Source: Kudoa neothunni
Taxonomy: Eukaryota; Animalia; Cnidaria
Direction: 5' to 3'
NCBI GenBank assembly: GCA_964304625.1
Contig: OZ199839.1
Location: forward strand, 9,857,072-9,921,071
Length of the DNA stretch: 64,000 nt
Within the stretch, counting starts at the first letter, position 1. Each line of letters opens with the position of its first letter. This document shows positions 1-61,300 of the stretch, piece by piece. The notes beneath the pieces are model-generated. The model was not told where the DNA came from, did no database searches, and was given only the letters and a program-made list of their open reading frames with translations. Both the position numbers and the translations under genes were made by a program.

Positions 1-19
1 ATTTTAATGATCAATATAG

Positions 20-226
20 GAGAAACTTCTAATCAATCAAAGTAAAATTGTAAAATGATAATATTAAATATGATTAATTTTTAGGGCGAGCACGTCAATG
101 TATTTTTTAGTTATTTGAGTATATTTGAATGAGATACCATTTAGGATAATTGGAATTATTGTTCCGATTGCTATCGTTGTAGTGGCGGCTGGATTGTACT
201 TTGGTTACAAGAAGAACAAATCATAA
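20..226 (+). CDS. 3' end (last three exons) of Cys/FN3-like type I membrane protein, copy A; gene starts upstream of the window
   Basis: Exons 20-41, 85-99 and 145-226 with GT-AG boundaries encode ...ETSNQSKASTSMIIGIIVPIAIVVVAAGLYFGYKKNKS*, nearly identical to the ends of copies B and C. Confidence 0.9.
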
Positions 227-1173
227 GGATCGATCTAAACATCAGCTTATTAGTCATAATAAAACAATATTATTATTTTTAAAGTTTAAATTTTAACATT
301 TTATATAGTTTTTTTATTTTTCAAATACTAAAGTGATATAAAGCCTATGGCATACTAATAATTTAGTCAAACTTATATTAGATTTATAGTTTTATTCAAT
401 CTTGTTCTACGTATTAATTCTTTTACTAAGTCTACTAAATTAAAATAATATTTTTGTATGTTTAAAAATTTGCTCCAAATATGTTCAATGTAATAAGTTT
501 TATTTTATTGAAAACTGAGGTTAGCTTATAGGTAGAAATCATAATTTCCGACGTTTATTTTAGAAAAGTCGACGTTTAGATAAAAAAGGAATTTATTAGT
601 GCAAATAATCAAAATTTTCCTAAAGAATAGATATATTTTAATATTAACTATGTAATATAAAATAAAAATATTATATTGAAAACATTTTTCATCATTCACT
701 TCTGAGATTGATGCATAAATTGGTTTAAAAAATTTTTATTTAGAAAAATTTGTTTCGATTACGATAATTAATGATGGTATGCACATCAAATCTTGATATT
801 GTACCGACAAAATAATGTATTTTAATTTTTTGAGTATAACTTATTTCTATCTATAATGTTACTTCTAGAGTAAAGTTACAATAATTCTTTTTACAATTTG
901 TCTTTTTCATTCGTATCTAGAAAATTCGAGATATCATATGTATTCAATTCTTCAATATTATTATATCTATTTACATTCGATTTCTTCATAATTTTCTGGG
1001 AATTTTCAATTGTGAAACAACGGTATGTTTGATTTTTTATTCTTCCCGATATTTCTAAACTTTAAAATCAACAAATTCTGACATCTTAATTAAAAAAAAT
1101 CTTTTGGAACAAAAGAAAAATCAACTTCTCATCTTTAAAACTACTTAATATGTTAGACTTGTGTATACTATAT

Positions 1174-4100
1174 CAGAGGTGGCCAAACTTGCCCAGAACG
1201 GGAGTCAATTATAAGGTTGCCTAAATTTTCATCAGCCACAAAGAATTAAAATCATTTATGTAACATTTCCTTATTCAACCCTTTCACGTTCTATTTTTTG
1301 GTTTTTCTAAAAAAATATATATTGATAATTGGATATTTTTTAGTAAAAATATATAATTTTAATTTGAAAAATAATTATATCATGAAGATTTTTTAAATTT
1401 TGTTCATGTGCATTTAATTACACATTGGGACTAAATGATAAATAAAAGTTGAAAATGAATAAAATGTTCAAAGTAACTATTCAAACATTAGATTTAATGA
1501 ATAATTATTTTAAATTTCAAAATTCATGAAACGTTATTAACAAATAACCCTAAAACAGCATGTCTCCCATGAACCATCTCCAAATTTTTTTCATTTTTCT
1601 TAGTAATAATATATAAATTTATTTATAATGTCAACATAATGTAATTTTTTATTTATAAATTTATTTTTTAACGCGTATTGGTTCGGTGTATTTAATTTCA
1701 CTAAGATTAGAAGAAAAAATGACATAATAATTTGCAAGAAAATAACACACAAAATAATAAACGTACGGATTAATTCAACTTAATTAATTTCATTTTTGAT
1801 GAAATTCGTAGAAACAATTCCTTTCTATAACCCGAAAACAATTCGTTTTGCATTTAATGCATTTGAATGACATAATTTTTTGGACAAACTTTGCATCTAT
1901 TACGTGTGGGCGTGCCTTCGGGGGAAGGCCCAACATTGTCGAATCAGATATCATCAGAAAGAGAGGGAACCACAATTTTCTGACTTATTGAATTCTTCAA
2001 TTCACTTTCTACTGATAATGATGATTTCCCTCGCTTTAACTTTACGTTTGTTTCCTTTTAAGAAACGTTAAAGACTCGTATTCTGAATAGGTGAAATTCA
2101 GTTAACCAAATATTTCGCTCTCTTCTATTTCTCTTTTATAATACCCAAGAGTCCACCAAAGCTGTATTTATTCCTCAATAAAATATCCTCAAGTTAACAT
2201 TTTAAACCGTTGTTTGGTTGGTTTTCCATGCACATGTTGCTTTGAACAGCACCTACCTTTAAATGATATCATCTGTTCATCTACAGGTAACTTCCTTTCG
2301 GGTTGAATCTTTAACCAATTTGATCTTAAATAGTCAAAAAATTGTCTTATTTTCAAAAACCTACAAAAAAAGGATTGGATTGTTGAGTGACTATTTCGTC
2401 ATTGTATTTTAAAATGAAGAAATCAACTCAAATCTACGGCGTATGAACACGTTAGCAATTGGCTCAAACTTAAAACATCTTTGCCAATAACAACGATATC
2501 TAGGCATCCTTATTATACCCATTAAAATGATAACTCCAATAAACTTTTCTATTTCATCACTATCAGTTTTGAAACATGAATTAGATCGGCTGAAATAAAG
2601 GTTTTTTTGTTCAACCATCGAATCTATGAAAGATTTATTCATAAATTGGTTGAAGTAATCGATAGGAATAAAAAGTCCATTTATTTCTTCAAAATATCAC
2701 TCTGAATTCTCATAATCAACATTATTATTTAATGTTAAAATCTATATAATCCAATTATATTTGAAGTTCGAGTTGTATTTTTCTTCGTCGGTAACCTCAT
2801 TATGGTTTTCTGAGTATTCATCGCATTTTTCAAAAATATCGATATTTTTATTTTCTAAACAGATCTCCGGTTCTAAAATATTAGGATCGGGCATATTGAC
2901 TACTTTTTGTCCTATTTCTCCACTTTTTGCAGATAAATCCGAAATATTGTAATTCATTTCTTCATCACGTGTGTTCCACGGAATCCCAATGTGCATTTAA
3001 ATGCACAAGCTCTAATACCCAAATAGCTATTTATTCTTAAAATCTTTTTATATATTTTATTATTTGTTATGGAAAATTCAAATTAATTTTTAAAGTTGAC
3101 GTTGATAATGAACACTGATCAATTCTATGTGTGTAATCTTTCACGTTTGGAGCATGCTCTATATATAGATGAAAAACATAATATTTTCTTACATTTTCAA
3201 GGAAAATTATTCATACTTTGAAATAGTGATGACAATTAAGTATTGATTATGATACATCGAACATATTGTATGAAACAGTAGTTAAGTGTATTAAAAGATT
3301 GCGTTTTTCTTATGTGCATTCAAATGCACACTAGACGCGAAAGGGTTAAACTTACATTTTTGGGAAGTTTTTGATAAATATTAAGATATATTTATGTAGA
3401 AATATAAATAAAGGTCTTTATTTCTTTCTTATTCAGTTACTCGCTGGAAAACTTTCATATAATTTTTATAGGTATAATTTATGATGGTTTTTCCAAAAAG
3501 GTTTATTAGGTGTTAATAATCCAAGAAACTTTTTATCCATGAAAAATATCGCAAAAAAAATTAAATTAATTACGTGCGAATTAAATAATAACACAAGAAT
3601 TTAATGCATTCGAACAAATTATTTTTAGAAATTGTTTCTAATGTTGCAAGTTTTTTACGCTTCAAAATTATCGGTGTGCTTGCGGTAATCTGCTTCGTAA
3701 GCTGTTAGTGCTGGATAAATTAGTTCCTGCAGGTGTTTGTTTGGGAGGGAGGGAACCGCGATGCTTCGATTTTGGAAACTTCATCATTGAAAAAATGCAG
3801 ACAACACTAAGTTTTTCCAATGAAAACAAAAAGTGTTTGAGGCAAATTTATTTTTATTTTTAATATTTATTTTCTGTAACATATTTCCAAAGATCGCTGG
3901 ATGAGTTTGAATTATGAATCATCCTAAAAACTTTAATGCGTGTTTTATTCTTTCGATATATATCACTTTGGTAATGGATAAACCCTAGTTTTAATTGCAT
4001 TTCATAATTTAACTAGTAATAATTCTAGTTTTTATCGAATATTAAAAATATTTGGTAGACTGTAACGATGTTTTCTAATCAAAAATATAATCTAGTTTAC

Positions 4101-4255
4101 GATTAAAGATTTAATTTCTTCACTGGATTACATAGTTTGAATTTTTCACTTTCCTGAGTCAACTCACGGGTTGAATAAAAAAAACGTGAACTCACAAAAT
4201 TTTTTTTCAAGAGTCTCACCATAACGTACAAAAAGCCACAGTTTGTCCACCCCTG
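1174..4255. mobile_element. hAT-superfamily DNA transposon (degenerate) with a nested piggyBac
   Basis: TIRs CAGAGGTGGCCAAACT and (revcomp) CAGGGGTGGACAAACT; perfect 8-bp TSD TACTATAT at 1166-1173 and 4256-4263. Confidence 0.9.
1279..3345 (-). mobile_element. piggyBac element with decayed transposase
   Basis: TIRs CCCTTTCACGTTCTA / CCCTTTCGCGTCTA flanked by TCAA and TTAA; subterminal palindromes TGTGCATTTAAATGCACA near 1407, 2990 and 3313; minus-strand fragments 'EIEKFIGVIILMGIIRMPRYRCYW', 'DEQMISFKGR' and a Cys-rich C-terminus (1790-1975). Confidence 0.88.
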
Positions 4256-7090
4256 TACTATATCCTGAATTTATCTAATCATTCAATATGTTTGGATAAA
4301 CCTATTGAAGAATTGGCCACTATTTTGGTGGATAATTTGTAAGCGAAAGCAAATTTTTTGGATAAATAAATTATATATTTATCAATTATTACAATAATCG
4401 AATAAAACGGCAAATTTGGTACTGATTCATGATGATTTTCCAAATAATTTCCCATAATAACCTTGGAATACTGTTGGCAACATAACGTGCAGTTGTACAA
4501 ATTATATCACCTAATATCCAGGACTTAGCATTTCTTTTTCTTATCATATACTATTTTTGAGTTCTATTTCATATTTTATACCATTTTTAGGAATGAGATA
4601 AAAAAATCCTTGACGGATCAATTTTTTAATAAAACAGCAGAAAGTTTTATACAGAACCGTTATTGTACAAAATTTCGCATCCACTACCTTTTGTTTTGCA
4701 TAATGGGTTAAATGCGTAAAGCATGTTATAGTTGTAATATTCTTATGAATCTTGTTTATTATTTTTTAATATTTTCTTTATGCAACGCGGAGTTCGGAAC
4801 GATGGAAACAAAATTTTGCCACATAACCCACTTTTTTAAATACTTCTGAAATGACGTTGGCCATTATGACAGAATTGAGTTCATTCACAATTCATATTAT
4901 AACATTAAAACATTTATTTCATTAGTGTTCAGATTGTAAAAACAAATCAATATGTATATTATTGGTCTGTTTTAAAGTTAAAGCTTTTGTCTATTATAAG
5001 GGAAAATGCATATTTGCATAACTGGATTTTAAAACTTTCAAAATTATTATCATAAAAAGATGGTAAATATTCGGCCAACTAATTGTGCCATTTAGCAATG
5101 ACCTATCTAAATATTAATACTTAATTATAACATCACGAAAAGTGTTTCTGTCGTCAGATGTCAATAGGAAAAACCATCAAAAGCAACAATAGACAATAAG
5201 ACCATTTTATGATCATTATCCCGTTTATATCTAAAAAATATTTGGAATGGGAGAGAAATTTTCAAATGAGACTTTAAGAACAGATGTTTTTCGAACAAGT
5301 GTGTTTCATGACCCTCTTCTTTTAAATAGAAAGAAAAAGTTTGCGGACCTGAAAATTAAATGTGCCATTTACATTTTCTATATCAGTTCATTCAAGTAGA
5401 AAATTTTTGATTTTTCTCCCTCTTCTGCCTATAATGAAGAAATTTAATAGAAAATGAGAGTTTAAAAAGGAAATAAAATTCTAGGAATAGAAAACTAACG
5501 TTTACCGATTATAATCGATAATTACGGTTTCTGAACATAACATTTTCTAATTCCTTGTTTTTCACCGCCGCAGGGATTTTTTTAATTTATTATTTTTCTT
5601 AATAAATACATGTAATACCTAATATTCCTAGTATCAAAATTTATACTAATTTCTGAAAATAATATATAATTTAATTTCTGTCATTACTTTATAATTTTAA
5701 AAATAATTTATAGATTATTTTCTAAACTTTTTTTTATAAATAAATTAATTGTTAAATATGAATTGATTCTATAAAAAGTTTTCACACAATAAAATTTGTA
5801 TAAATTCGATGGATTTAGTATATTAGACGTTTTTGACTAATGTGTCGTCCGAAGAAACAAAGATTATTCAACCAAAGTATGGCCGTTACTTATAAAGATG
5901 AAAAATATTAATTTTCTCTATTAGTAAAGAAACGACAAAATATAAAATTTTACTTTGAGAATTTTGATTAAAAAATTAACTTAGATACTGATTTTCTAGC
6001 AATGAGATATTGCGAAAGATAATAAGGTTTTTTTTAATTGTCATAAAATATCGGAAAAGTCTAAGTTCATATTTAGGAATTAATATTTTTAAATTTATCT
6101 CCAGAAATTATATTAAAAACCTCTTATTTCGATTTATTATTCAAGTTATTAATTTTATTGAGAAGTATATTTTCATCAGATACAAATTCTTATCGGAGAC
6201 TACTCAAACTTCACTGATTTCCTCAAATATTTTTCTTTAATTTATAATTTGGCATAATAAAACGAGCGTATATAATTTAATAAGTAATTTTTTACATATT
6301 GAAATTGAACATATAATTTTCTACATTTAATTATTAACAAAATCAACGTTTAACTTTAAATGTAATCGGTACTTAAGACTATTAAAATCTACATCATTAT
6401 AATGGTTATAAAAAGGTAAAATGAGTATATATTGATGTTAGTCACTCCGAATGATTTACAATATTGGTAGATAAAATATAACAAATAACTTTGGTGGGCA
6501 TTTTTATTAATGTGAGTCTTCCGAAAGCCGAATTGATAAATTTACAATCAAAATTTCAAAAAATGGCCAATGTTTCAGAGAGATGATTCGATGAAAATAA
6601 AATTTTATGAAGACAGAATTATCCAAGTAGCAAGAGTTCTTACTGACACATTAAGATCTCATTTACTGTCAATATAACCTATTCTACATGAAATATCAAA
6701 ATTAGTTCCAATTGATTTAGTACATTTTGTGCAACATATTTTCTAGAGAATAATGAGAAACGTGAATTAATTTCAAGCCAGCTGCTACACCAAATATTGC
6801 GTTGATCTTGTTGATAGAAAATCCAAAGTTTTCTTAGACAAATTACTCTTAATAGTTGTTTTTTCATTATAACGACGGAGAGCCATTAGTTCAACTTTTT
6901 ATTCTAATCAGCCCTTTTTTAACTGTTTCAGCCAGATATTGCATACACTATCCCAAAGAAAGCCAAATGATAATTATTCCATATCTTTATTTAACATTAA
7001 GTTTTCGTAAAGGATTACATAAAATACATGCTGAGGTAGTCTTGTAAAGATTGTAAAATTCTAATAACTTTAAATAACTTAAATAATCCG

Positions 7091-7145
7091 ATTAGTCATA
7101 ATTTTTAGATGGTATTATCTCTTTCATGAATAGTTATTGTTTATT
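7091..7145 (+). promoter_or_regulatory. Conserved upstream motifs of the membrane-protein genes (ATTAGTCATA; TGAATAGTTATTGTTTATT)
   Basis: Both motifs recur in the same order upstream of copy C (11534-11543, 11611-11629) within otherwise diverged flanks. Confidence 0.5.
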
Positions 7146-7190
7146 GGTACTATAAAATAAATAATCTGATATATATTCTACTTAATATAA

Positions 7191-10157
7191 ATGAAGACAA
7201 ACATGGTCTCATTTACCTTGATTGTTGCATTATTTTGTAATAAATTAAAATTCTAGATTCTTTTTAAACCATTTTAGGCATTAAGAAAGTTTTTGTGCTT
7301 GGAGCCACAGGTGCGACTACTGAACCTGCCAAAGTTCTCACCTATCGCATAGCAGATAGTAACAAAGTACATCTGACTTTATCTGGAACAATTTATGCTA
7401 CTTCGGAGAAAAAATGCCTTATAAGAAAAGAAAAGGAAGGTACGGTCGAATTTGACCATATAAATACATGTCCTAGCAATGATAGTACACATGGAGGTGG
7501 AAAATGTCTTCGTGCTTGCTCTGGAGAAAACATTAAATTGGATTTTAATGTGTTATCACCCAAAACGAAATATATTTATGTATATTCTGGGGGTGAATAT
7601 GCAGAAATACATAATAAGAATAATGGAGGAGATGTGTTTGGATTGTCCATTCGTAATTTTTATTAATTTGTTTTTAAAAATAATTAAATATAGCTCTCTT
7701 GGTGAATCCAACAGTCACAATTTCTACAGACACTTCAGGGAAACTGAAACTTGCAACCAAAACATGTCCTAAAGTCGCTTGTCCCATTTATTACAAAGGT
7801 GTCCAATACGCCGTCGGTACAGCTGGTGCTACTTGTGAAGCTAATATTGAAAATACGGTTGATTATGACGTGCTGATACCTCACTATGAAATGAAATGTA
7901 AGAATTTACCAAGCTTTTTCTACCATATGCCAAATACATACATGAGAAAAAACATTGCTACATATAAACCACAGTACTATGTTACATATAAGGAAAATGA
8001 TAATGACAAGTTAAAATATCTTCTTAAGTTTACAAATGCTTTCCCATCAGAAATTTGTTTTTTTAATGTAAAAGATGCAGCGACTAACGCACCGACAAAC
8101 ACGAATAAATATGAATCATCGTGTGGCGGTGAGGCTGGAAAAAAATGTTATGCACCCTGCAATAATGTTGAATTGGCAGTTACTGCAACCAAACAGATCG
8201 TGAAAATATTAATTAAAACTAGGCACCATCAATTAGAAGTAGATGGAGCCTACGTTGATGGTTATGAAGAGAAAAAATTTGGTAATATTTCTTTAAATTT
8301 TAACTAGTTATCATTAGTATTAGCTATTGTTGAGGCCGCAAAAGCAAACGCTCTTTTAACGGCACATTCTGCTACTGGAGTTACAATTAATAGATCCCTG
8401 TATAGTCCAGGGAATAATAACGTTAAATTTACGACTTGCGCTTTAAAATACTTTCCAGCTGATATACCAAGAACAACAGTGAGAACCGCGGCAAATTGTC
8501 CAAGTGCTGATTGTGGAAGCGAATGCACAACCAGTTCCACTATTGGTTCTTTGATTTCAGGAAAAGCATATATAATTGAAATAACTTCTACTACCCCTAT
8601 AACGAATTATGATGGTTTTAAAGAATATTTGTTTTTCAGAACTAGTAATTATACTGATGTTTCATATTATATATTTTTTAGCTCGAAAACAGGGTTCAAA
8701 CTTCGTCACTTCCGCACCTACCACAACTGACATAACAGCTACATTAAAGGCAGTTGACGGTGATATGGAAAATAAACCGGCTGAACCAACATGTGAATAT
8801 TACATCAGTAAAGCAGGTAAAAACATGTTTGTAGAAGCAGAATGTGAAGATAGTTATCCATGCAGAGGATTTTGTAAGGAACCAAAGAAATTGATAAATT
8901 TAAGCCTTAAAACAAATTATGATATTAAAGCTGTTTCAAATAAAGACTATGGGATAAAAATATTTGAAAACGTCTCAACAAGTAAAAATATGGCATTGCC
9001 ATTTCATTTAATTTACGGTTGATAGCTTATTCGACCCTCACTCTATCCCACAATTTCCTCGATAAAGGATTTCGAGTTGTTGGAAGATTAACAACTGCAT
9101 ATCCAGAAGCAATATGTCACTATAAACTTAAAGTTAAAAATGGAACTAGTTCAGATGTAGTTTATTCCTGCCCAACAATTGCCCCTTCTCCTCCACAAGC
9201 CAACCCACCCAATACTAATGCTGTTCAATCTTCCACGAATCAAAATTTAGAACAATCTAATTTGATCAGTCATATAAATTCTTACAATAATAGAGTAGCA
9301 AGAGCGAGTGGCGCAGCTGTTATAACTCCAAGTTCATCTACGAACACCCAAACTGTAATTTCTCCTACCACGACAACTCAGTCTAAGTTCCCACCATGCA
9401 ATAAACCACCACTATGCAACAACATAATAATCAGCGAGGGTTACGAGGCTGATAAAGAATACCAAGTATTGGTCACAGCTGTGGACAGATCGGAAGAAAT
9501 TACCATCAATATTCCTAAAAGTATAATATTTATTTATCAAACTATAGAAAGTTCTAATATATCACACACAAATAGATGCTCTCCCTGAGAATCCTGAGGA
9601 AGTAGATAAACAAATCACAGTGATTATCGAAAGAGTTGGCGATACTTTAAAAATCACATCATTGCTTCCAAAAGAAAAGAATGAAAATTCATTGTGTCGA
9701 TGGATATTGAAAGATATGAACGATCCTTCTTTACCAATAGTGAAAAAGTGTGACACTGTTGGAAGTAGTAGGTGTGCACTTCCAACATGTAAATCATTCA
9801 CAATTGAGCGCGTAAGCGATATCAGTGATTATCATTTAACGGTTATTCACTCCCAAGACCCTACAATAAAAGGCGTTGGGAGAATTAAACAAGGTAGTTA
9901 ACAATAAATAATAATAATTATTATTATTATTATTTTAATGATCAATATAGGAGAAACTTCTAATCAATCAAAGTAAAATTGTAAAATGATAATATTAAAT
10001 TTGATTTAATTTTAGGGCGAGCACTTCAATGTATTATTAAATTATTTGAGTATATTTGAATGAGATACCATTTAGGATAATTGGAATTATTGTTCCGATT
10101 GTTATCGTTGTAGTAGCAGTTGGATTGTACTTTGGTTACAAGAAGAATAAATCCTAG
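7191..10157 (+). CDS. Type I membrane protein with seven Cys-containing FN3-like repeats, copy B (10 exons, 853 aa)
   Basis: Exons 7191-7236, 7278-7652, 7694-8281, 8324-8644, 8682-8981, 9026-9520, 9576-9893, 9951-9972, 10016-10030 and 10076-10157 splice into one open frame (2562 nt). Signal peptide MKTNMVSFTLIVALFC; FN3-like motifs (LSPKTKY, LISGKAYIIEI, LSLKTNYDIKAV, YEADKEYQVLV); TM IIGIIVPIVIVVVAVGLYFGY followed by KKNKS. The gene model is solid; the fold call is inference. Confidence 0.88.
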
Positions 10158-11673
10158 GGACCGATCTAAATATTAACTAATAAGTTTCTTTGAAAACATA
10201 TTATTTCTTAAAGATTATGAATTTCAATATTTTATATAGTTTTTTTATTTTTCAAATATTAAAGTGATATAAAGCCTATGGCATATTAATAATTTATTCA
10301 AACTTAGAATCATATCAGATTTATAGTTTGATTCAATAATTGCCTTCATACTAATTTTTAATTAAACCCAATAAATAAAAATTAATATTTTTTAAAATTT
10401 AAAATGTTCCTATCAAATATATTAAATCAAAAAAATTTTATTTTTTTAAATTATGACTTAAATAAATTTGAGGCCGTAATTTTCGACGTTTATTTTTGAA
10501 AAATTCGGCGCTTTAATAAAAAGGTGTGCAATCGTGTAAAAATCAAAATGTTCCTAGAGAATAGATATATTGAGATATTAATTATTTAGTTTTAATTTAA
10601 AATATAATATTAAAATCATTTTTCATCGTTTATTTGAGAGATTGATCCAGTAAACTGAGGGAATGATAGTTGTATACACATCAAATTTTGGCATATTGCC
10701 GACAAAATAGGATATTTTAATTTGATTGATTAAAAGACTTAATTCTGTCTATAATGTTACTCTCGGGAGAAGAGAATGAAATAGCTTACGTTATAATTTT
10801 TCATTTGTATTCGTATCAAGAGAATTTGAATTACCATTTGGATCCACGTCTTTATTATTTTCACGTCTCTTTACATCAACATTCATCTTAATTTCTAGAG
10901 AATTTTCATATAAAAAACAATTTTATGTATGATTTATGCTTGTTTCCGATAATTTTAAAATTAAAATATCAATAAATCTTCGTATCAATTAAATTTTTTT
11001 TATTTTAATACAAAATATTACGTGCTTAAATTATTGAATATTTAATAGCTACCTCAAATATTTTTAAATTTAACTTTTATTCTAAATAATTTTCTACCGA
11101 CTAAATATTTGGATGCAACTAAGGTATTTTTAACATCTCTCTTCTTGATTTAAAAAAGTATAACTGCTGACTTATAAAAAATATCATGAAATAGAAACTA
11201 ACATGATAAAATTGGATTGTAGGAAGTTTATAATAATTTTTTTTAAGTTTATCTAAACTCCGTAAATACTGATATTTTTAAATTTATATGTAAATTTAAA
11301 TAATTTTAATTAGGCATGAATCCAATGCAAACAGGTCATTATTACCTCTAAATTTGTTGGATAATAATCTTTTTGAATAAAAAGTTATGAATAAATTACA
11401 ATAAAATCATGAGAATTCTTTCATTAATCGTAGTATCACTGATATTAACTGTGAGTAAAAAATTTAGTTATATCTTGGCTAAGATAAAAAAATAGAGAAT
11501 CTAAGTAAAGATACCTAATATTAATTTAGTAAAATTAGTCATATCCATATAATTATAAATGTCTTCAATAAATTAGATTTTTATTCATGAAAAGAACGTT
11601 ATTTTTGTCTTGAATAGTTATTGTTTATTCATCGCATAAAAATATAATCAGATTTATTCATTATTTCATAACA

Positions 11674-14664
11674 ATGAGAGCATTATTGGCTTTATTAGGA
11701 TTGCTAATAACTTTTTTTAGTATTTTTCTATTTTTGAAACCCTTATTATACTCCAATTAGATAGGGTTAAGTATTCGGTTAATGCAGCTGAAGTAACGAC
11801 TACCGAACCTGCCAAAGTTCTCACCTATCGCATAGCAGACAGTGACAAAGTACATCTGACTTTATCTGGAACAACATATGCCACATCGGGGAAAAAATGC
11901 CTTATAAGAAAGGAAAAGGAAGGTACAGTTGAATTTGACCAGATCAATACATGTCCTAGCAGTGATAGTACACATGGAGGTGGAAAATGTCTTCGTGCTT
12001 GCTCTGGAGATGACATCAAATTGTCGTTTGATAAGCTATCACCCAGAACAAAATATGTCTATGTATTTTCGGGTACTGATGCTAGCACAATGGAAGATAA
12101 AAATAATGGAGGAGATGTGTTTGGGTTGTCTACACGTATTTTACGTAGAATTTACATATAGATTAATTGAGTTTAGCGTTATTGGTGAATCCAATCGTCA
12201 CAATATCCTTACACGATTCAAGTAGATTGAAACTTGCAACTAAAACATGTCCAAAGGTTAATTGTCCTATTTATTACAATGGTGTTAAATACGCCGAAGG
12301 AGGAGCTGCAAGTAATTGTATAACTGATATTGATAATACGGTTGATTTTGACGTGTTGATACCTTATTATGAAATGAAATGTGTAAATTATCCAAGCTTC
12401 TTCTACCATATGCCAAATACATACATGAAAAAAAACACTGATATATATAAACCACAATACTATGTGACCTATAAAGAGGGTGACAACGCAAAGACGAAAT
12501 ATCTCTTAAAGTTTAAAAATGCTTTCCCATCAGAAATTTGTCTTTTTAATGTTAAAGATGCAGCGACTAACGCACCGACAAACACGAATAAATATGAATC
12601 ATCGTGTGGCGGTGAGGTCGGAAAAAAATGTTATGCACCATGTGATAATGTTGAATTGGCGCTTGCTACATCCAAGCCGATCGTGAAAATATTAATTCAA
12701 ACTAGAAACCATAAATTTGGAGTGGATGGGACAAGCGATGATGGTTATGTAGAGAAAAAATTTGGTGAGATTTCAGTGAATTTTAAGTAATCATCACTGA
12801 AGTTTAGCTATCGTTGAGTCTACAAGCGCGAGCACTCTCTTAACAACACATTCTGAGACCGGAGTAACAATTAACAGATCTCTCTATAATCCAACTGTGA
12901 ATAATAACAATGTGAAATTTACGACGTGCGATTTAAAATACTTTCTGGCTGATAAACCAAGAACAACAGCGGGGATGGCCGCCCAATGCCCAAGTGAAGC
13001 TTGTCAAAATGGTTGTTCAGCAAGCACCACTATTGGTGGATTGACTGCAGGAAAAGCATATATAATTGAAATAGCCTCTTCACCTGCTATAAATGATTAT
13101 GCTGAATTTAAAGAATATTTATTTTTCAGAACTAGTAATTTAGCGAAGTTTATTATTATTATTAAAAATAATTTTCAGGTAAAGCTAGCGCGTCAAATTA
13201 CGTTACCATCACTCCCACAACAACCGACATAACGGCTACGTTAAAGGCGATTGACGGTAATGTGGGAACAGCATCAACCGAACCAACATGTGCATATTAT
13301 TTCAGTGAACAAGGAAAAGGAACATTTGTGGAAGCAGAATGTGAAGATAGTAAACCATGCAGAGGATTTTGTAGGGACATCAAGAAATTGATAAATCTAA
13401 ATCCCAAAACAAATTATGATATTAAGGTTGTTTCAAATAAAGACTATGGAATAAAAATATTTGAAAACGTCTCAACAAGTAAAAATATGATATTAAAATC
13501 TCATTTAATCTAATTTACGTTTGATAGCTTTTTCAACCCTCACTCTATCCCACAAGTTTCTCGATAAAGGATTTCGAGTTGTTGGAAGATTAACAACTGC
13601 ATATCCAGAAGCAATATGTCATTATAAACTTAAAGTTAAAAATGGAACTAGTTCAGATGTAGTTTATTCCTGCCCAACAATTGCCCCTTCTCCTCCACAA
13701 GCCAACCCACCCAATACTAATGCTGTTCAATCTTCCACGAATCAAAATTTAGAACAATCTAATTTGATCAGTCATATAAATTCTTCCAATAATAGAGTAG
13801 CAAGAGCGAGTGGCGTAGCTGATATAACTCCAAGTTCATCTACGAACACTCCAACTATAATTTCTCCTACCACGACAACTCAGTCTAAGTTCCCACCATG
13901 CAATAAACCACCTCTATGCAGCAGCATAATAATCAGCGAGGGTTACGAGGCCGATAAAGAATACCAATTATTGGTTACAGCTGTAGACAGATCGGAAGAA
14001 ATTACCATCAATATTCCCAAAAGTACGATATTTATTTATCAAACTATATAAAGTTCTAATATATCACACACAAATAGATGCTCTCCCTGAGAATCCTGAG
14101 GAAGTAGATAAACAAATCACAGTGATTATCGAAAGAGTTGGCGATACTTTAAAAATCACATCATTGCTTCCAAAAGAAAAGAATGAAAATTCATTGTGTC
14201 GATGGATATTGAAAGATATGAACGATCCTTCTTTACCAATAGTGAAAAAGTGTGACACTGTTGGAAGTAGTAGGTGTGCACTTCCAACATGTAAATCATT
14301 CACAATTGAGCGCGTAAGCGATATCAGTGATTATCATTTAACGGTTATTCACTCCCAAGACCCTACAATAAAAGGCGTTGGGAGAATTAAACAAGGTAGT
14401 TAACAATAAATAATAATAATTATTATTATTATTATTTTAATGATCAATATAGGAGAAACTTCTAATCAATCAAAGTAAAATTGTAAAATGATAATATTAA
14501 ATTTGATTTAATTTTAGGGCGAGTACGTCAATGTATTTTTTAATTATTTGAGTATATTTTAATGAGATACCATACATTTTAGGATAATTGGAATTATTGT
14601 TCCGATTGTTATCGTTGTAGTAGCAGTTGGATTGTACTTTGGTTACAAGAAGAATAAATCCTAG
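11674..14664 (+). CDS. Type I membrane protein with Cys-containing FN3-like repeats, copy C
   Basis: Same exon structure as copy B; signal peptide MRALLALLGLLITFF; motifs LINLNPKTNYDIKVVS and IGGLTAGKAYIIEIAS; identical TM and tail; stop TAG at 14662-14664. Confidence 0.88.
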
Positions 14665-15644
14665 GGATCGATCTAAACATCAACTTATTAGTCTTAATAA
14701 AACAATATTATTATTTTTAAAGTTTAAATTTTAGCCTTTCATATAATTCAATTTTTTCAAATAAATACATTATTTATATTCTATTTTGATTTATATAATA
14801 ACTTTTCTGTTAATCTAAGTTAACTCTCAATTTGAAATACTAATAGCAGTTTATCAAAAATATTCCATCCAAAGCATTTCGTATAAAACTGTTATAAAGG
14901 TTTTGAAAATTAATAACCCAATTATATATCAATGATATATTAAAAGAATTCTTTAATTTAGACATGAGAATATTTATCACAGTAAAAAAATCCTTAAAAT
15001 ATATTCCATTCACTATAGACAAATTATATATAATTAATATAATATCGTTATCTCCACATATTTAAAATTAATCATTTCTTGATTTATTGTAATTAATAAA
15101 CAATTCCTACATCATCCAATATTAACTATTATCAGAATATTTTATTTATGGGCACAATAAATAGGACATTCATAGGATACATGACAACAATAGACTAAAC
15201 ATGAAGATTTTTTGTCTTATTATAATGAATGATCTCGCATACGTCAACTTCGGTCACATTCCTTATATAACCAATCATTACAATTATATATAACATAAGC
15301 TGTAAGTAACTTTATATTACAATCTTTCATTCTATTTAAAAACCAAACAATTATTTTTTGAAAAAAACCAATCTTCAATAATTAATTTAACTTATTATAA
15401 AAATAATTTTTTAACATTTATTTTAATCTCATTGCCTTAAATGTCATTGTAACAACCAAATCACATAAAAACAATAATTTACCTACCTAAATAATAAATA
15501 GAATATTGTAATCCCAATTAAAAAATCCAGTAAACATTTTAATCATTAATTTTAAATATAAAATTAAAACATTATGCATTTATATATGAGTTAAATAGCA
15601 CAGTTACCGTTAAACAGTGATCGATGCATCGTGCGTACGCATCT

Positions 15645-40029: not shown

Positions 40030-42455
40030 CTTCTAGCAGATGTTTTTTCTTGTTTCTTTTTTTTACGATTATTTGTAATAAAATAAAAGAATAGTGAGTG
40101 AAAAAATTCCTTGACAACAAATAACATCTAACTTTTCACATAATCTTAGGTCGACAACAATCGTTGTTCTCTTAATCTTTTTTGCATTACCCAAACACTC
40201 AATTATTCATATATCTTAAGTATATTGACTTTTTTCATTTTATTCAACTGTCAAAAATAATTTGAAAGTTTATAAATAAAATTTCACTCATATTCAGTAT
40301 TGTCTTATTTATTATGTCATAAAAACGATTTGTGTAATCTAAACCCATTAACTATATGTAATTATAAATACTTTAGTTTACAAATTTTTATAAAAAGCTT
40401 TTACATTTAAATAAATGAGATATGCAATTATATTCTTAATAAAGTAGGACATCATTTTTAAAAAATAATATTATTGAAAATGTTGTTTCTTCATTGTATT
40501 TGTAATATCTAACAAAAAATTATAATTCAGTTATTACTGTTTATAGTACCATTTATATATAATAAACACGAAAATATATAATCTATAAATTTTACAAAAT
40601 AAACAAAATTATGTACTATAAGTACATATATGTTTTATTCACTGTTTACATAACTATATGTTAAAAATATGTTTTTTCATAAAAACAATTTTTAACCATT
40701 TTATAATGATCGCGTCATATTTCTGAATTAATCTCAATTTTTTAACTTACTCGAAATATTACTAATAACATATTAATCTCACGGGCATCCATATTTATGA
40801 AAGTGTTTATCTAATTCATTATAATGTGATTAAATATTGAACATAGAAACAGAAATGCGAAATTGGTTAAGATTCTTCACAAGTATGTAGCTATGATAAC
40901 AAGTAAAGGTAATTCTGTAAATATGAAAATACAATTGCGAATATAATAGACAGACATATATTTTAAATAAAGGAACATTTGATTTCTTTAAAAATATTAT
41001 TTAATAATTCAACATTGGACCAAATTTTTAGCCGACACTCCTCTTCTTATTGGGAGAATTTTTGTTTTTAGACGACCCCAACAAACTTCGATCATATTGA
41101 TGTGGGTTCCGTCTCTTACGTATTCCTTGGGGTGGTTTATTGCAGTGTGCCTATACCTCAATGATCCCAAATTATTGTAGGCTGCCCATTCGTCGCTGTA
41201 GATCGCTGGACCAGGAATTACTTCTGTTTGGGTAATTTGGGTTAACGTCTCCATATCTCGTCGCTGGACGATTAAATACCGAACCTCTTTCAAGGATCTC
41301 TTACCTTTTTCGTCAATTTTGCAGTGATAGTCCAAATATCCAGGAACCATCAACACGATTCCCGTATCTTCCTCTCCGGTTCGCACGTATATTTAATAAA
41401 TAAATATATATATATATATATATGATGATTTATTACAGGAGTTTTCAGATGTTTCGTCATCAGAAGGACAATATTCGTTCTCATTCATATTCTCCATAGC
41501 TACTCCATTAAAGCCATAATATTTAATCTATTTCAAATCAAAATTATAATTACTTGGCTCAATTAATTATTTGTTTACTGAGACTTTCCATTTATCTCCC
41601 CCTAGATAATGCCCTCTGTTATTTTTTCACTTCCCATGTAGAAGACTTTCGGTGACCAAAATTAGAGGCATAAATAGTCCTGATTTTCTCGAACCAATAC
41701 GATGTGGTTGGTTTGCTAGTCTTCACCAAAACTACAGTAGACAATATCGTATTATCCATAACCCAATAATAGATAATCTTAAGAATTTTTTTATCATTAT
41801 TTTCGCTGATGAGCCTACGCTATTGGTGAAAAATGTGCCATTTCGTAGAGAATACTTAATTTTACAACTAAACGAAATTTACATATAAGAATCATTAAAA
41901 GATTAACTTATTGTAGACATAAGTAAAAATACAATCCACTCCATTACGTTCATATAGTGACAATAATGTTATTGGTCGCTGAATATTCAATTTTCTCTTT
42001 GTTAGATAAAAACAGTCGAAATTATGGCAATTTGAACATCTTTCTGGGGAACTTTCGAGGTATCCTTGTATAATTAACACGTTAAATAAAACATCGTGAT
42101 TGTTAATTAATGTAAAAAACGAATCCTCAACAATGAAACTAGGAAACTCCACTTAAAGCAGAACGAGGTAAGTTCAATCCATTTAAGACATATGTTCCGT
42201 CACATTCAAGTAACATACGAATAAAAATATTTTAAAATAAATTCGAACACTTAAAAATTAGTATTTATTAAAATAAAAATACAACATAAACCTGATTTCT
42301 TTATAATTATCGAACCAAATTAGAGATTAGTTGAATGTTTGGATAATGCAAAAAAAGATTAAGAATATGATTGTTGTCGATGAATTTTTAAATTCACTAT
42401 TCTTTAATTTTATTATAAACAATCGTAAAACAAGAAAAAACATGTGCAAGGAGGT
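40030..42455 (-). mobile_element. Merlin (IS1016/IS1595-like DDE) transposon remnant
   Basis: ORF 41009-41386 has IYSDEWAAYNNL...HTAINHPKEYVRDGTHINMIEVCWGRLK; N-terminal CxxC fragment at 41895-42152; inverted repeats at ~40030-40150 and ~42340-42455. Confidence 0.78.
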
Positions 42456-60317: not shown

Positions 60318-61300
60318 GTGACCGTGCATCCAATGGGGAAAAATGAAACACCTCGTAAAATGTCAGAAAAATAAATTTTTATTACTTAAAAACCATTATA
60401 TATTTAAATAAAGTCGATAATTCTTTTCCACTATATTTTCTTCGAAACATGAAATCAACAACATAGTTAAGAAGTGTTCCTGGGGTTTTATTTGTGGCGT
60501 TTCTATATTTTCTTTTAAAAGCCCCCATGTAACTCCTATTTTGTTAGTGTGGACCCCCTCAATGGAAACAAACCTTCTTTTATGGATCATGGTACCGTGA
60601 ACAACAAAACCTAGATCCTTCAAACTGTTGTAACCTTTCCGACCATCGGTCCAAATAGTTGACTTTTCCATTACATTCTCAATAATTGTTCTTTCCAGAA
60701 TATCCCTATTTCTTTTTTGTGTTATTTTAAAAAAGAAATTTACGTCTTCGTCTATTCCTCCCACCATCCAATACTGTTGATTCCGAAGAATTCTTCGAAC
60801 GTTGGACTTCATTTTTGATGTGGCGGTCTCATCTATTTGTACTACAACACCCTTCCCGCCTATTTTAGAAAATTCCTCATCTAGTTTAGATGCCAAAAAA
60901 TCTGTAATGACGTTTTTCCAATCATTTATGGTGGGGTTTGAAGAAATTCTAATGTGTTTACGAATATCATCGTACGTCATTGTTGGATGTTGGATTACCG
61001 TTACTATAAAAATAAAAATTTTCCACAAAGGAATTCGAGAAATTTCTAAAATAGTTCCTTTTCGTATCAACGTTTTTTTGTTGCATGAAATACATTTGTA
61101 TTGATAACCATCATCAGCGTCTTTTCTCTTAACTAGAAACATTTGACCGCCACAAAAACATTTTGAATAACTTTTCGTAAGACCCAGATTTTGCATTGTT
61201 TTTATTGTATATTCAAGGTCATCGCGAAAATAACCATAATCCAAGTTTGTAATCTCATCAATATTCTCTAACGTACATTTTTTTTGTTTGAATGCGTCGT
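60318..61300 (-). mobile_element. Merlin (IS1595/ISXO2-like) transposon, 282-aa transposase ORF with a frameshifted end
   Basis: ORF 60396-61244: zinc-ribbon cysteines, IGGKGVVVQIDET, WMVGGID, IWTDGRKGY, GVHTNKIGVTW; it abuts and truncates the Helitron helicase. Confidence 0.88.

What the first reader, a model, noticed from the sequence alone, without database searches (positions are those of the whole stretch)
1..14664. Tandem array of an unfamiliar surface protein built from seven 4-Cys FN3-like repeats
Seen: at least 3 head-to-tail genes; copy B splices to 853 aa with a signal peptide, seven ~100-aa beta-rich repeats separated mostly by phase-1 introns, a TM helix and only KKNKS inside the cell. 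Six repeats share C-x(~16-21)-C-x(~5-11)-C-x(3-5)-C (the second gap is expanded in repeat 6), most followed by an FN3-type L-x-P-x-T-x-Y-x-(I/V)-x-V motif. Established: classical FN3 domains usually lack such a Cys cluster, and tailless Cys-rich type I proteins in tandem arrays are the design of parasite surface coats (e.g. Giardia VSPs). Inference: a lineage-specific adhesin, decoy or variant surface antigen family that I do not recognise.
Basis: partly seen in the sequence, partly recalled or inferred. Interest (0 to 1): 0.85.

Follow-up and report, generated by a model that had tools for sequence, protein, structure and literature searches.

The report
Kudoa's giant FN3-like surface-protein family
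The window holds two complete genes and one remnant of an unnamed family, several hundred copies strong, in the tuna-muscle parasite Kudoa neothunni; each gene encodes a membrane-anchored rod of seven disulfide-braced FN3-like domains with almost no cytoplasmic tail, which makes it a candidate for this parasite group's variable surface coat.

Summary

**Gene models.** Copy B (7191-10157) and copy C (11674-14664) are eight-exon genes. All seven introns are phase 1 and 36-171 nt long. Each encodes a signal peptide, seven beta-rich domains with exactly four conserved Cys each, a TM helix and the tail KKNKS. Summed by exon, B is about 851 aa. "Copy A" is only a TM-exon remnant.

**Organism.** The genome matches the published Kudoa neothunni assembly (a myxozoan cnidarian parasite of tuna).

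**Family size.** B and C are the last members of a 12-gene head-to-tail array. The superfamily has at least 150 strongly scored loci per query and 449-501 first-look candidates on all three chromosomes.

**Fold.** AlphaFold models of three domains are Ig-like sandwiches. R1 and R3 match FN3 domains (Z 6-7).

**Homology.** Pfam, PDB sequences and the ESM Atlas give nothing. Among 1.84 billion proteins there are only 15 credible relatives, all unnamed fragments.

**Evolution.** Framework residues are under purifying selection and loops evolve almost neutrally. The membrane-proximal half is homogenised (low dS at unchanged dN/dS).

**Reading.** Most likely a lineage-specific variable surface or adhesin family. 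Expression, localisation and function are untested. The scan had flagged the same superfamily elsewhere on this chromosome (s1-695904).

The parts
122..226 (+). Remnant 'copy A': TM exon plus stop only (hydrophobic helix, tail KKNKS)
   Evidence: tblastn with copy B exons finds only the TM exon here and no E1-E5 in the 6.5 kb upstream. The exact TM-motif pattern hits G000:C2:9857211.
7191..7236 (+). Copy B exon 1: start codon and signal peptide (15 codons plus 1 base, phase 1)
   Evidence: ATG followed by a hydrophobic stretch, then a GTAATA donor at 7237 and a TTTTAG acceptor ending at 7277. The same 'type' of signal exon occurs in paralogues L057 and L064.
7278..7652 (+). Copy B exon 2: repeat 1 (R1), the membrane-distal 4-Cys FN3-like domain
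   Evidence: AF2 pLDDT 70.9. Most of the 50 listed VIA matches are FN3 domains, best Z 7.0 with 84 residues aligned at rmsd 2.7. Four Cys are invariant in 29/29 paralogues.
7694..8281 (+). Copy B exon 3: repeats 2 and 3 (R2 with a deviant Cys spacing; R3 canonical 4-Cys)
   Evidence: AF2 pLDDT 82 with two beta-sandwich domains. Domain 1 matches Ig-like domains at Z 7.3; domain 2 matches gp130 FnIII at Z 6.5. The relative P0002 reads straight across the E1/E2 junction.
8318..8644 (+). Copy B exon 4: repeat 4 (R4)
   Evidence: Open frame with phase-1 GTAATA/AG borders. Four Cys conserved in 28-29/29. This is the most divergent exon in the array (dS 0.70).
8682..8981 (+). Copy B exon 5: repeat 5 (R5)
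   Evidence: Used as a query it gives 150 scored genome hits, all E<4e-21, from 449 first-look candidates. Four Cys conserved in 30/30.
9026..9520 (+). Copy B exon 6: repeat 6 (R6) with a 59-75-residue P/S/T/N-rich insert between Cys2 and Cys3
   Evidence: Cys positions and insert lengths come from 28 paralogues. A conserved (R/K)-(V/I)-A-R motif sits inside the insert at 9292-9303. dS across the array is only 0.10.
9576..9893 (+). Copy B exon 7: repeat 7 (R7), membrane-proximal
   Evidence: 92-100% identical across the 12-gene array with dS 0.055. An alternative acceptor at 9551 is possible.
10051..10157 (+). Copy B exon 8: TM helix, tail KKNKS, TAG stop
   Evidence: An open TM-plus-short-tail exon was found in 29 of 30 paralogous loci, with consensus FRI(I/V)GI(I/V)VP..VG(L/F)YFGY(K/M/W)KN(K/R)(S/G). 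The exact motif has 32 genome matches against 0 for the control. The join to exon 7 is inferred, not shown by RNA.
11674..14664 (+). Copy C: complete paralogue with the same eight exons. Exons: 11674-11719, 11761-12135, 12177-12764, 12808-13134, 13179-13478, 13528-14022, 14078-14395, 14567-14664.
   Evidence: Splice-site search constrained by open frames; all introns are phase 1 and 41-171 nt. Exon identities to B are 66-77% for E1-E4, 94% for E5 and 100% for E6. It has a second type of signal peptide.

Best explanation
These genes belong to a lineage-specific multigene family of the myxozoan parasite Kudoa neothunni. Each gene encodes a type I membrane protein. It has a cleavable signal peptide, a rod of seven Ig-like beta-sandwich domains with four structural cysteines each (those modelled look FN3-like), a mucin-like loop in domain 6, one conserved TM helix and a 4-5-residue basic tail that cannot signal on its own.

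Shown: the gene structure, the fold of three domains, the size and dispersal of the family, purifying selection on the framework, near-neutral loops, and homogenisation of the membrane-proximal half.

Inferred: the proteins sit on the parasite's outer membrane. The conserved stalk and anchor present variable distal domains to the host, as an adhesin or variable-coat repertoire. Tandem duplication and segmental gene conversion create and reshuffle the variants.
For: Organism.
- The assembly has three chromosomes plus an 18.2 kb contig, 40.26 Mb in total.
- A (TAAACC)n telomere sits at one chromosome end.
- These figures match the K. neothunni assembly in PMC12239612: 40.2 Mb, N50 12.0 Mb, GC 30.4%, median intron 49 bp.

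Architecture.
- The same E1-E6 order is found in 30/30 near loci and 10/10 distant loci.
- The TM exon and short tail are present in 29/30 near loci.

Fold.
- AF2 gives pLDDT 82 and 71.
- VIA gives Z 6.0-7.3 to Ig-like and FN3 domains.
- Foldseek's best hits for exon 3 are tandem-FN3 cytokine receptors.

Real genes, not dead repeats.
- dN/dS is 0.25-0.43 in every exon and 0.04-0.3 in strands and the Cys framework.
- All 28 Cys are conserved.
- Only 2-4 of 150 exon copies carry stops when compared with a close query.

Variable head, uniform stalk.
- E1-E4 are 54-98% identical within the array, against 89-100% for E5-E6.
- dS is 0.27-0.70 for E1-E4, against 0.10 and 0.055 for E5 and E6, at unchanged dN/dS.

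Scale.
- First-look candidates number 501, 486 and 449 for three queries, with 150 scored each, all E<1e-21.
- The C(Y/F)APC(N/D) motif has 144 matches against 1 for the control.

Orphan status.
- Pfam, PDB sequences and the ESM Atlas give nothing.
- Only 16 hits appear among 1.84 billion proteins: one is spurious low complexity, and none of the eight looked up carries a name.

Context. A 2026 preprint states that antigenic variation has been seen in myxozoans, including Kudoa thyrsites, with the mechanism unknown.
Against:
- The exon 7 to TM exon join is therefore inferred from conservation only.
- No window shows convincing dN/dS above 1. The few such windows have near-zero dS.
- Kudoa plasmodia grow inside muscle fibres, where antibody pressure is indirect.
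The exact TM motif occurs only 32 times.
- The fold matches are middling (Z below 8) and carry no functional information.
Confidence: 0.55

Rival explanations
1. The family serves the parasite's own cell biology: cell-cell adhesion or recognition between the nested cells of plasmodia and developing spores, or self/non-self recognition as with cnidarian Alr proteins. It would not be a host-facing coat.
For: - Myxozoans are cnidarians, and Hydractinia has a clustered family of sequence-aberrant Ig/Fn3-like type I proteins with extra invariant cysteines, used for allorecognition (PMC9546547).
- Rods of tandem Ig-like or FN3 domains are a common design of animal adhesion molecules (established knowledge).
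- The overall dN/dS of 0.25-0.43 fits ordinary constraint.
Against: - Several hundred paralogues in a genome with about 5,300 predicted genes is far more than housekeeping adhesion needs.
- There are no cytoplasmic signalling motifs; the tail is 4-5 residues.
- The family is dispersed over all chromosomes rather than held in one complex.
- No homologue was found among proteins of free-living cnidarians in 1.84 billion sequences.
Confidence: 0.2
2. The ectodomains act as decoys or receptor mimics. After shedding, or after intron retention, a soluble stack of FN3-like domains would bind host cytokines or other host ligands.
For: - The best Foldseek and VIA matches are FN3 modules of cytokine receptors: IL-7Ra, common gamma chain, IFNAR1, IL-9Ra, gp130.
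- Some of these receptor domains also carry four cysteines (established knowledge).
- Reading through the exon 7 donor meets a stop after two codons, which would give a soluble form.
- A conserved (R/K)-x-A-R motif lies in the R6 insert.
Against: - The matches are generic (Z 5-7, E 1e-4 at best, 6-14% identity).
- No WSXWS motif is present, and the Cys spacing differs from cytokine-receptor D1.
- Hundreds of diverging copies are not expected for mimicry of a few conserved host ligands.
- The TM exon is conserved.
Confidence: 0.1
3. The copies are a repeated DNA unit, or genes decaying after a burst of duplication, with no present function. The open frames would simply be young.
For: - 45.6% of the genome is called repeats, mostly unclassified.
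- Two neighbouring copies (G000:C2:9842815 and 9847196) give identical scores for E1-E5.
- A truncated remnant and a copy lacking half of E2 exist.
Against: - Paralogues as low as 31-56% identical keep all exons open and in order.
- dS reaches 0.4-0.7 while dN/dS stays at 0.25-0.43, and falls to 0.04-0.1 in core strands.
- All 28 Cys and the phase-1 splice sites are conserved.
- Relatives exist in other sequencing samples.
Confidence: 0.04

Closest known systems
Fibronectin type III domains, especially the tandem FN3 modules of class I/II cytokine receptors
   Same: A seven-strand beta-sandwich is predicted for R1 and R3. Most of the 50 listed structural matches for R1 are FN3 domains. An EF-loop Leu plus strand-F Tyr motif is present in several repeats. 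Domains are encoded by phase 1-1 exons. Extra disulfides occur in some receptor FN3 domains (established knowledge).
   Different: There is no Pfam fn3 hit, even at E<=1, and no PDB sequence hit with a profile. No strand-B Trp is seen by eye and no WSXWS. The four-Cys spacing (about 17, 4-11, 3-5) is its own. There is no signalling tail.
Hydractinia Alr family (unusual IgSF genes of the cnidarian allorecognition complex, PMC9546547)
   Same: Both are cnidarian-lineage clustered families of type I membrane proteins. Their Ig-like or Fn3-like domains escape Pfam and were recognised by structure prediction. Both have invariant non-canonical cysteines and highly diverse sequences.
   Different: [quoted passage not shown] Its Fn3-like fold lacks the tyrosine corner. 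Here there are seven domains with four Cys each, a Tyr-corner-like motif retained, a 4-5-residue tail, and hundreds of copies on three chromosomes. Sequence homology between the two was not tested.
Giardia/diplomonad variant-specific surface proteins (VSPs), and the VSP-like genes reported in Sphaerospora molnari
   Same: Signal peptide, large ectodomain, single conserved TM helix, a very short conserved basic tail, and a large multigene family in a parasite. The definition used is the one quoted in the preprint.
   Different: VSPs have more than 10% Cys with many CXXC motifs and are not Ig-like. Here Cys is about 3.3% (28 in about 851 residues), with no CXXC (each repeat's last Cys pair is spaced CxxxC to Cx5C), and the domains modelled are beta-sandwiches. 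The tail is KKNKS rather than CRGKA. One-at-a-time expression is unknown.
Other parasite multigene surface families with variable heads and conserved anchors
   Same: Tandem and partly chromosome-end clusters, a variable distal region with a homogenised proximal region, and signs of gene conversion.
   Different: There is no sequence or fold relationship, the host is an animal (a cnidarian) rather than a protist, and no evidence exists for switching or for positive selection.

Membership tests
Fibronectin type III (Pfam PF00041) | Match to the Pfam fn3 profile | tested here: not met
   hmmscan of all seven exon translations at E<=1 gave no fn3 hit. The A1 profile found nothing in PDB sequences at E<=10.
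Fibronectin type III (Pfam PF00041) | Seven-strand Ig-like sandwich resembling solved FN3 domains | tested here: met
   R1: Z 7.0 to IFNAR1 and 6.5 to IL-9Ra and IL-12R FN3 domains, with about 84 of 107 residues aligned at rmsd 2.7-2.9. R3: Z 6.5 to gp130 FnIII. The Z values are middling. R2 matches generic Ig-like domains instead.
Fibronectin type III (Pfam PF00041) | Conserved EF-loop Leu and strand-F tyrosine corner; Trp in strand B | tested here: inconclusive
   By inspection, the Leu-x-Pro-x-Thr-x-Tyr-x-(I/V) type motif is present in R1 and R5 and partly in R4, R6 and R7, but absent in R2 and R3. I saw no strand-B Trp; the only Trp noticed in the ectodomain follows Cys1 of R7 (sequences).
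Class I cytokine receptor homology module | WSXWS motif and the receptor-type cysteine spacing in D1 | tested here: not met
   No WSXWS was seen by eye in the exon translations. The Cys spacing is 16-21 / 4-11 / 3-5. Structural similarity alone is E 1e-4 and TM 0.3-0.4.
Diplomonad-type VSP | More than 10% Cys with at least five CXC/CXXC motifs | tested here: not met
   28 Cys in about 851 residues, four per domain, no CXXC. Definition as quoted.
Diplomonad-type VSP | Signal peptide, one TM helix, short conserved C-terminal motif, multigene family | tested here: met
   The tail consensus is (K/M/W)KN(K/R)(S/G), which differs from CRGKA.
Hydractinia Alr IgSF family | V-set/I-set domains, ITAM/ITIM tails, single gene complex | tested here: not met
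   The tail has 4-5 residues. The loci lie on all three chromosomes. R1 and R3 match FN3 domains and R2 generic Ig-like domains; no V-set or I-set assignment emerged. Sequence comparison with Alr proteins was not done.
Variant surface antigen system (functional class) | Large clustered family with variable exposed part, conserved anchor and recombination between copies | tested here: met
   dS is 0.27-0.70 distally against 0.055-0.10 proximally, at equal dN/dS.
Variant surface antigen system (functional class) | Surface location and exclusive or switching expression | not testable with these tools
The genome paper reports very few parasite RNA reads.
Variant surface antigen system (functional class) | Diversifying selection on exposed residues | tested here: inconclusive
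   Sliding-window dN/dS peaks at 0.8-0.96 in loops. Values above 1 occur only where dS is near zero. No site-model test was run.

The most novel reading that the evidence does not exclude
This family is the myxozoan counterpart of a variant-surface-antigen system. It would comprise several hundred genes, possibly several per cent of the gene complement and perhaps partly masked as 'unclassified repeats'. One or a few would be displayed at a time on the plasmodium or on migrating stages. New variants would be made by segmental gene conversion onto a constant stalk. This would supply the missing molecular basis for the antigenic variation reported in myxozoans.
Probability: 0.2. Interest if true: 0.85.

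Novelty: new variant of a known kind. Interest (0 to 1): 0.64.

Why it matters
Myxozoans are economically important fish parasites, and their host-interface molecules are almost unknown. The K. neothunni genome paper predicts only 5,316 proteins and, in the term searches I ran on it, does not mention this family. Yet several hundred intact copies exist, so it is plausibly one of the largest gene families in the genome.

If the proteins are surface-exposed, they are obvious candidates for immune evasion, tissue tropism, diagnostics and vaccines. They would also be an animal example of a design known mainly from protist parasites.

Independently of function, the family adds a sequence-orphan, four-cysteine version of the FN3-like fold. 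It is also a clean case of polar homogenisation within a tandem array.

Tried and rejected
- **Pfam on every exon:** only sub-threshold chance hits.
- **PDB sequence search with a 41-sequence profile:** nothing at E<=10.
- **ESM Atlas:** the search by features gave no usable hit. The search by shape gave only generic fn3/Ig-like clusters at TM 0.4-0.54.
- **Repeat-to-repeat homology by hhalign:** tried with 11 and then about 30 sequences per repeat. Best P was 0.016-0.06 and probability below 5%, so common descent of the seven repeats is plausible (shared Cys frame, phase-1 exons) but unproven.
- **ZP-N domain:** one VIA hit at Z 6.0. Rejected because it does not stand out from the FN3 hits and, from memory, ZP-N Cys spacing is much wider.
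- **Dilysine ER-retrieval signal:** rejected. The tail KKNKS has Asn, not Lys, at position -3 (established motif rule).
- **GPI anchor:** unlikely, because basic residues follow the hydrophobic stretch.
- **Transposon-borne gene:** rejected. Copies are head-to-tail with homologous spacers, and the nearby piggyBac and ISXO2-like pieces are separate fragments.
- **Further genome DNA:** The TM exon of distant subfamilies therefore stays unchecked.
- **Joined protein:** All searches and folds were exon by exon, by reference.

Full report
**What is in the window.**
- The first 15 kb is AT-rich (24-36% GC).
- Self-comparison shows two direct copies, 7314-10258 and 11797-14763, at 86% nucleotide identity. 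Window 1-327 matches the 3' end of such a copy at 91%.
- Open-frame pieces on the + strand line up into the same series in both copies.
- Using open frames and GT/AG signals I obtained an eight-exon model for copy B:
  - signal exon 7191-7236;
  - E1 7278-7652, E2 7694-8281, E3 8318-8644, E4 8682-8981, E5 9026-9520, E6 9576-9893;
  - TM exon 10051-10157.
- Copy C gives an equivalent model, 11674-14664.
- All seven introns are phase 1. In copy B they start GTA and are 36-157 nt long (median 41); copy C's are 41-171 nt.
- Summed exon by exon, the product is about 851 residues.
- Everything below was done exon by exon, by reference.

**Independent support for one splice junction.** An unnamed relative (P0002, from a Logan contig) reads without interruption from R1 into R2. 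Copy B's E1 residue 124 aligns to its residue 145 and E2 residue 1 to its residue 147. That leaves exactly the one split codon the model predicts.

**Copy A is a remnant.** Only the TM exon is present (122-226). There are no E1-E5 matches in the 6.5 kb upstream. The 401 bases just before the window are withheld as N, so an E6 could hide there.

**Whose genome.**
- The assembly has three large contigs (17.15, 12.04 and 11.05 Mb) and one of 18.2 kb, 40.26 Mb in all.
- 85 overlapping matches to five tandem TAAACC units run to the very end of contig 2.
- The published Kudoa neothunni assembly has a 40.2 Mb span, N50 12.0 Mb, three chromosomes, a circular mitochondrial genome and a (TAAACC)n telomere at one chromosome end. 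It also has GC 30.4% and a median intron of 49 bp (PMC12239612).
- The first 10 kb of the small contig has no tRNA and no Rfam rRNA match. Its 18.2 kb length lies within the 15.9-19.4 kb reported for Kudoa mitochondrial genomes.
- I therefore take the organism to be K. neothunni, a myxozoan (parasitic cnidarian) of tuna muscle. An earlier follow-up in this scan reached the same identification.

**Scale of the family.**
- The two genes are the last of a 12-gene head-to-tail array at G000:C2:9785217-9871700. One member lacks half of E2.
- Genome-wide searches gave the following:

| Query | First-look candidates | Scored | Weakest scored hit |
|---|---|---|---|
| 207-aa exon of copy B | 501 | 150 | E<1e-59 |
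| Same exon from a distant paralogue | 486 | 150 | E<1e-53 |
| 99-aa E4 | 449 | 150 | E<4e-21 |

- The three lists overlap only partly. Reading them side by side, I estimate well over 150 distinct loci were individually scored.
- A strict DNA pattern for C(Y/F)APC(N/D) has 144 matches against 1 for the control.
- Loci lie in many clusters on all three chromosomes. Several are near chromosome ends, for example C1 16.3-16.9 of 17.15 Mb, C3 0.05-0.46 Mb and C3 10.8-11.03 of 11.05 Mb.
- The E1-E6 order and exon sizes are kept in 30/30 nearer loci and in 10/10 loci of a distant subfamily. In the distant subfamily E1 is only 31-37% identical to copy B.
- A TM exon ending in a 4-5-residue basic tail was found in 29 of 30 nearer loci. 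Its exact motif occurs 32 times in the genome.

**Are these working genes?** Yes, as far as sequence can tell.
- Within the array, dN/dS is 0.25-0.43 for every exon.
- In sliding windows it falls to 0.04-0.3 in predicted strands and around the cysteines. It rises to 0.8-0.96 in loops: the R1 N-terminal linker, the Cys2-Cys3 loop, and the segments after the strand-F motif in R1 and R4.
- Values above 1 appear only where dS is almost zero.
- All 28 ectodomain cysteines are conserved in 89-100% of about 30 paralogues, and no other column is Cys-rich.
- With a close query, only 2-4 of 150 exon copies contain stops.

**Polarity along the gene.**
- E1-E4 are 54-98% identical among array members. E5 and E6 are 89-100% identical.
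- dS is 0.44, 0.48, 0.70 and 0.27 for E1-E4, but 0.10 and 0.055 for E5 and E6. dN/dS stays the same.
- The membrane-proximal half is therefore homogenised (gene conversion or repeated crossover), not more strongly constrained.
- This agrees with another first-stage note on the same stretch.

**Fold.**
- With 41 paralogues and relatives, AlphaFold2 models exon E2 as two beta-sandwich domains (pLDDT 82).
- Foldseek's best PDB matches are tandem-FN3 cytokine receptors and NCAM Ig-FN3 (E 1e-4).
- The Foldseek-independent aligner gives Z 7.3 for domain 1 against Ig-like domains. It gives Z 6.5 and 6.0 for domain 2 against gp130 and IL-21R FN3 domains.
- R1 alone (28 sequences, pLDDT 71) gives a top-50 list made up mostly of FN3 domains. 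The best is Z 7.0 with 84 residues aligned at rmsd 2.7. Foldseek is weak for it.
- In both modelled canonical repeats the cysteines sit in equivalent places. Cys1 is in the long central strand, Cys2 in the following loop, and Cys3 and Cys4 are at either end of a short strand just before the strand carrying the Tyr motif.
- These Z values are middling and show a shared fold only.
- Profile-profile comparison does not detect homology between the seven repeats. 'Repeat' here rests on the shared Cys frame, the strand-F motif, the fold and the phase-1 exon structure.

**Relatives and names.**
- No Pfam family matches. No PDB sequence matches. The ESM Atlas search by features gave no hit.
- An exhaustive HMMER pass over 1.84 billion representatives found 16 proteins. 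One is spurious low complexity. The others are mostly fragments of 123-479 residues. The eight I looked up are unnamed singletons from ENA and Logan assemblies. The three whose contigs I fetched lie on AT-rich contigs (25-35% GC), presumably other myxozoans.
- The genome paper and a 2026 Sphaerospora molnari genome preprint do not describe this family. The preprint reports different, VSP-like and RIFIN-like genes. It also states that the mechanism of myxozoan antigenic variation is unknown.
- Two further literature searches found nothing relevant.

**Interpretation.**
- The structural statement is well supported. This is a type I membrane protein with seven disulfide-braced Ig-like domains (the modelled R1 and R3 matching FN3) and a tail too short to signal. 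It belongs to a very large, intact, fast-diversifying, lineage-restricted family.
- The functional statement is inference from design and from the parasitic lifestyle: a host-facing variable coat or adhesin repertoire, with a constant stalk and variable head, diversified by duplication and conversion.
- It competes with three other readings: a role in the parasite's own cell-cell recognition, soluble decoys, and (very unlikely) non-functional repeats.

**Verdict.** This is a new, sequence-orphan family within a known kind of system.

Noticed in passing
window 9292-9303 (in exon E5): Inside the low-complexity P/S/T/N-rich insert of repeat 6, a basic (R/K)-(V/I)-A-R motif is conserved in 26 of 28 paralogues while its surroundings vary. 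It is RVAR in this array and (K/R)IAR in other clusters. It looks like a proprotein-convertase-type site lying between Cys2 and Cys3.
   Followed up: partly
window 9893-9902 and 14395-14404: Reading through the exon 7 donor meets a TAA after two codons (..QGS stop) in both copies. Intron retention would therefore give a soluble ectodomain without the TM helix.
   Followed up: no
window 2412-2642 (-): A fragment of a piggyBac-type transposase (Pfam PF13843, E 5e-14) lies in the spacer between the copy A remnant and copy B.
   Followed up: partly
window 41012-41386 (-) and 60399-61244 (-): Two ISXO2-like (IS1595-type) transposase remnants (Pfam PF12762, E 8e-15 and 4e-7).
   Followed up: partly
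G000:C2:9842815-9846000 and 9847196-9850043 (L052, L053): Two adjacent array members give identical scores for E1-E5 and differ only in E6 and the TM exon. This points to a very recent 4.4 kb duplication, or a crossover, with a different 3' end.
   Followed up: no
L037 (G000:C4:1-10000): The first 10 kb of the 18.2 kb fourth contig has no tRNA gene and no Rfam rRNA match. This fits the extremely divergent mitochondrial genomes reported for Kudoa.
   Followed up: partly
L014 and L015 (Logan run SRR33849685): Relatives from another sample lack introns where K. neothunni has them. P0002 runs through R1-R3, and P0015 is a 479-residue uninterrupted open frame that appears to span several repeats. 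The source organism could not be identified.
   Followed up: partly
window 7191-7236 versus 11674-11719; loci L046-L075: Two unrelated signal-peptide exons (MKTNMVSF.. and MRA(I/L)LALL..) alternate among array members on otherwise similar genes.
   Followed up: no
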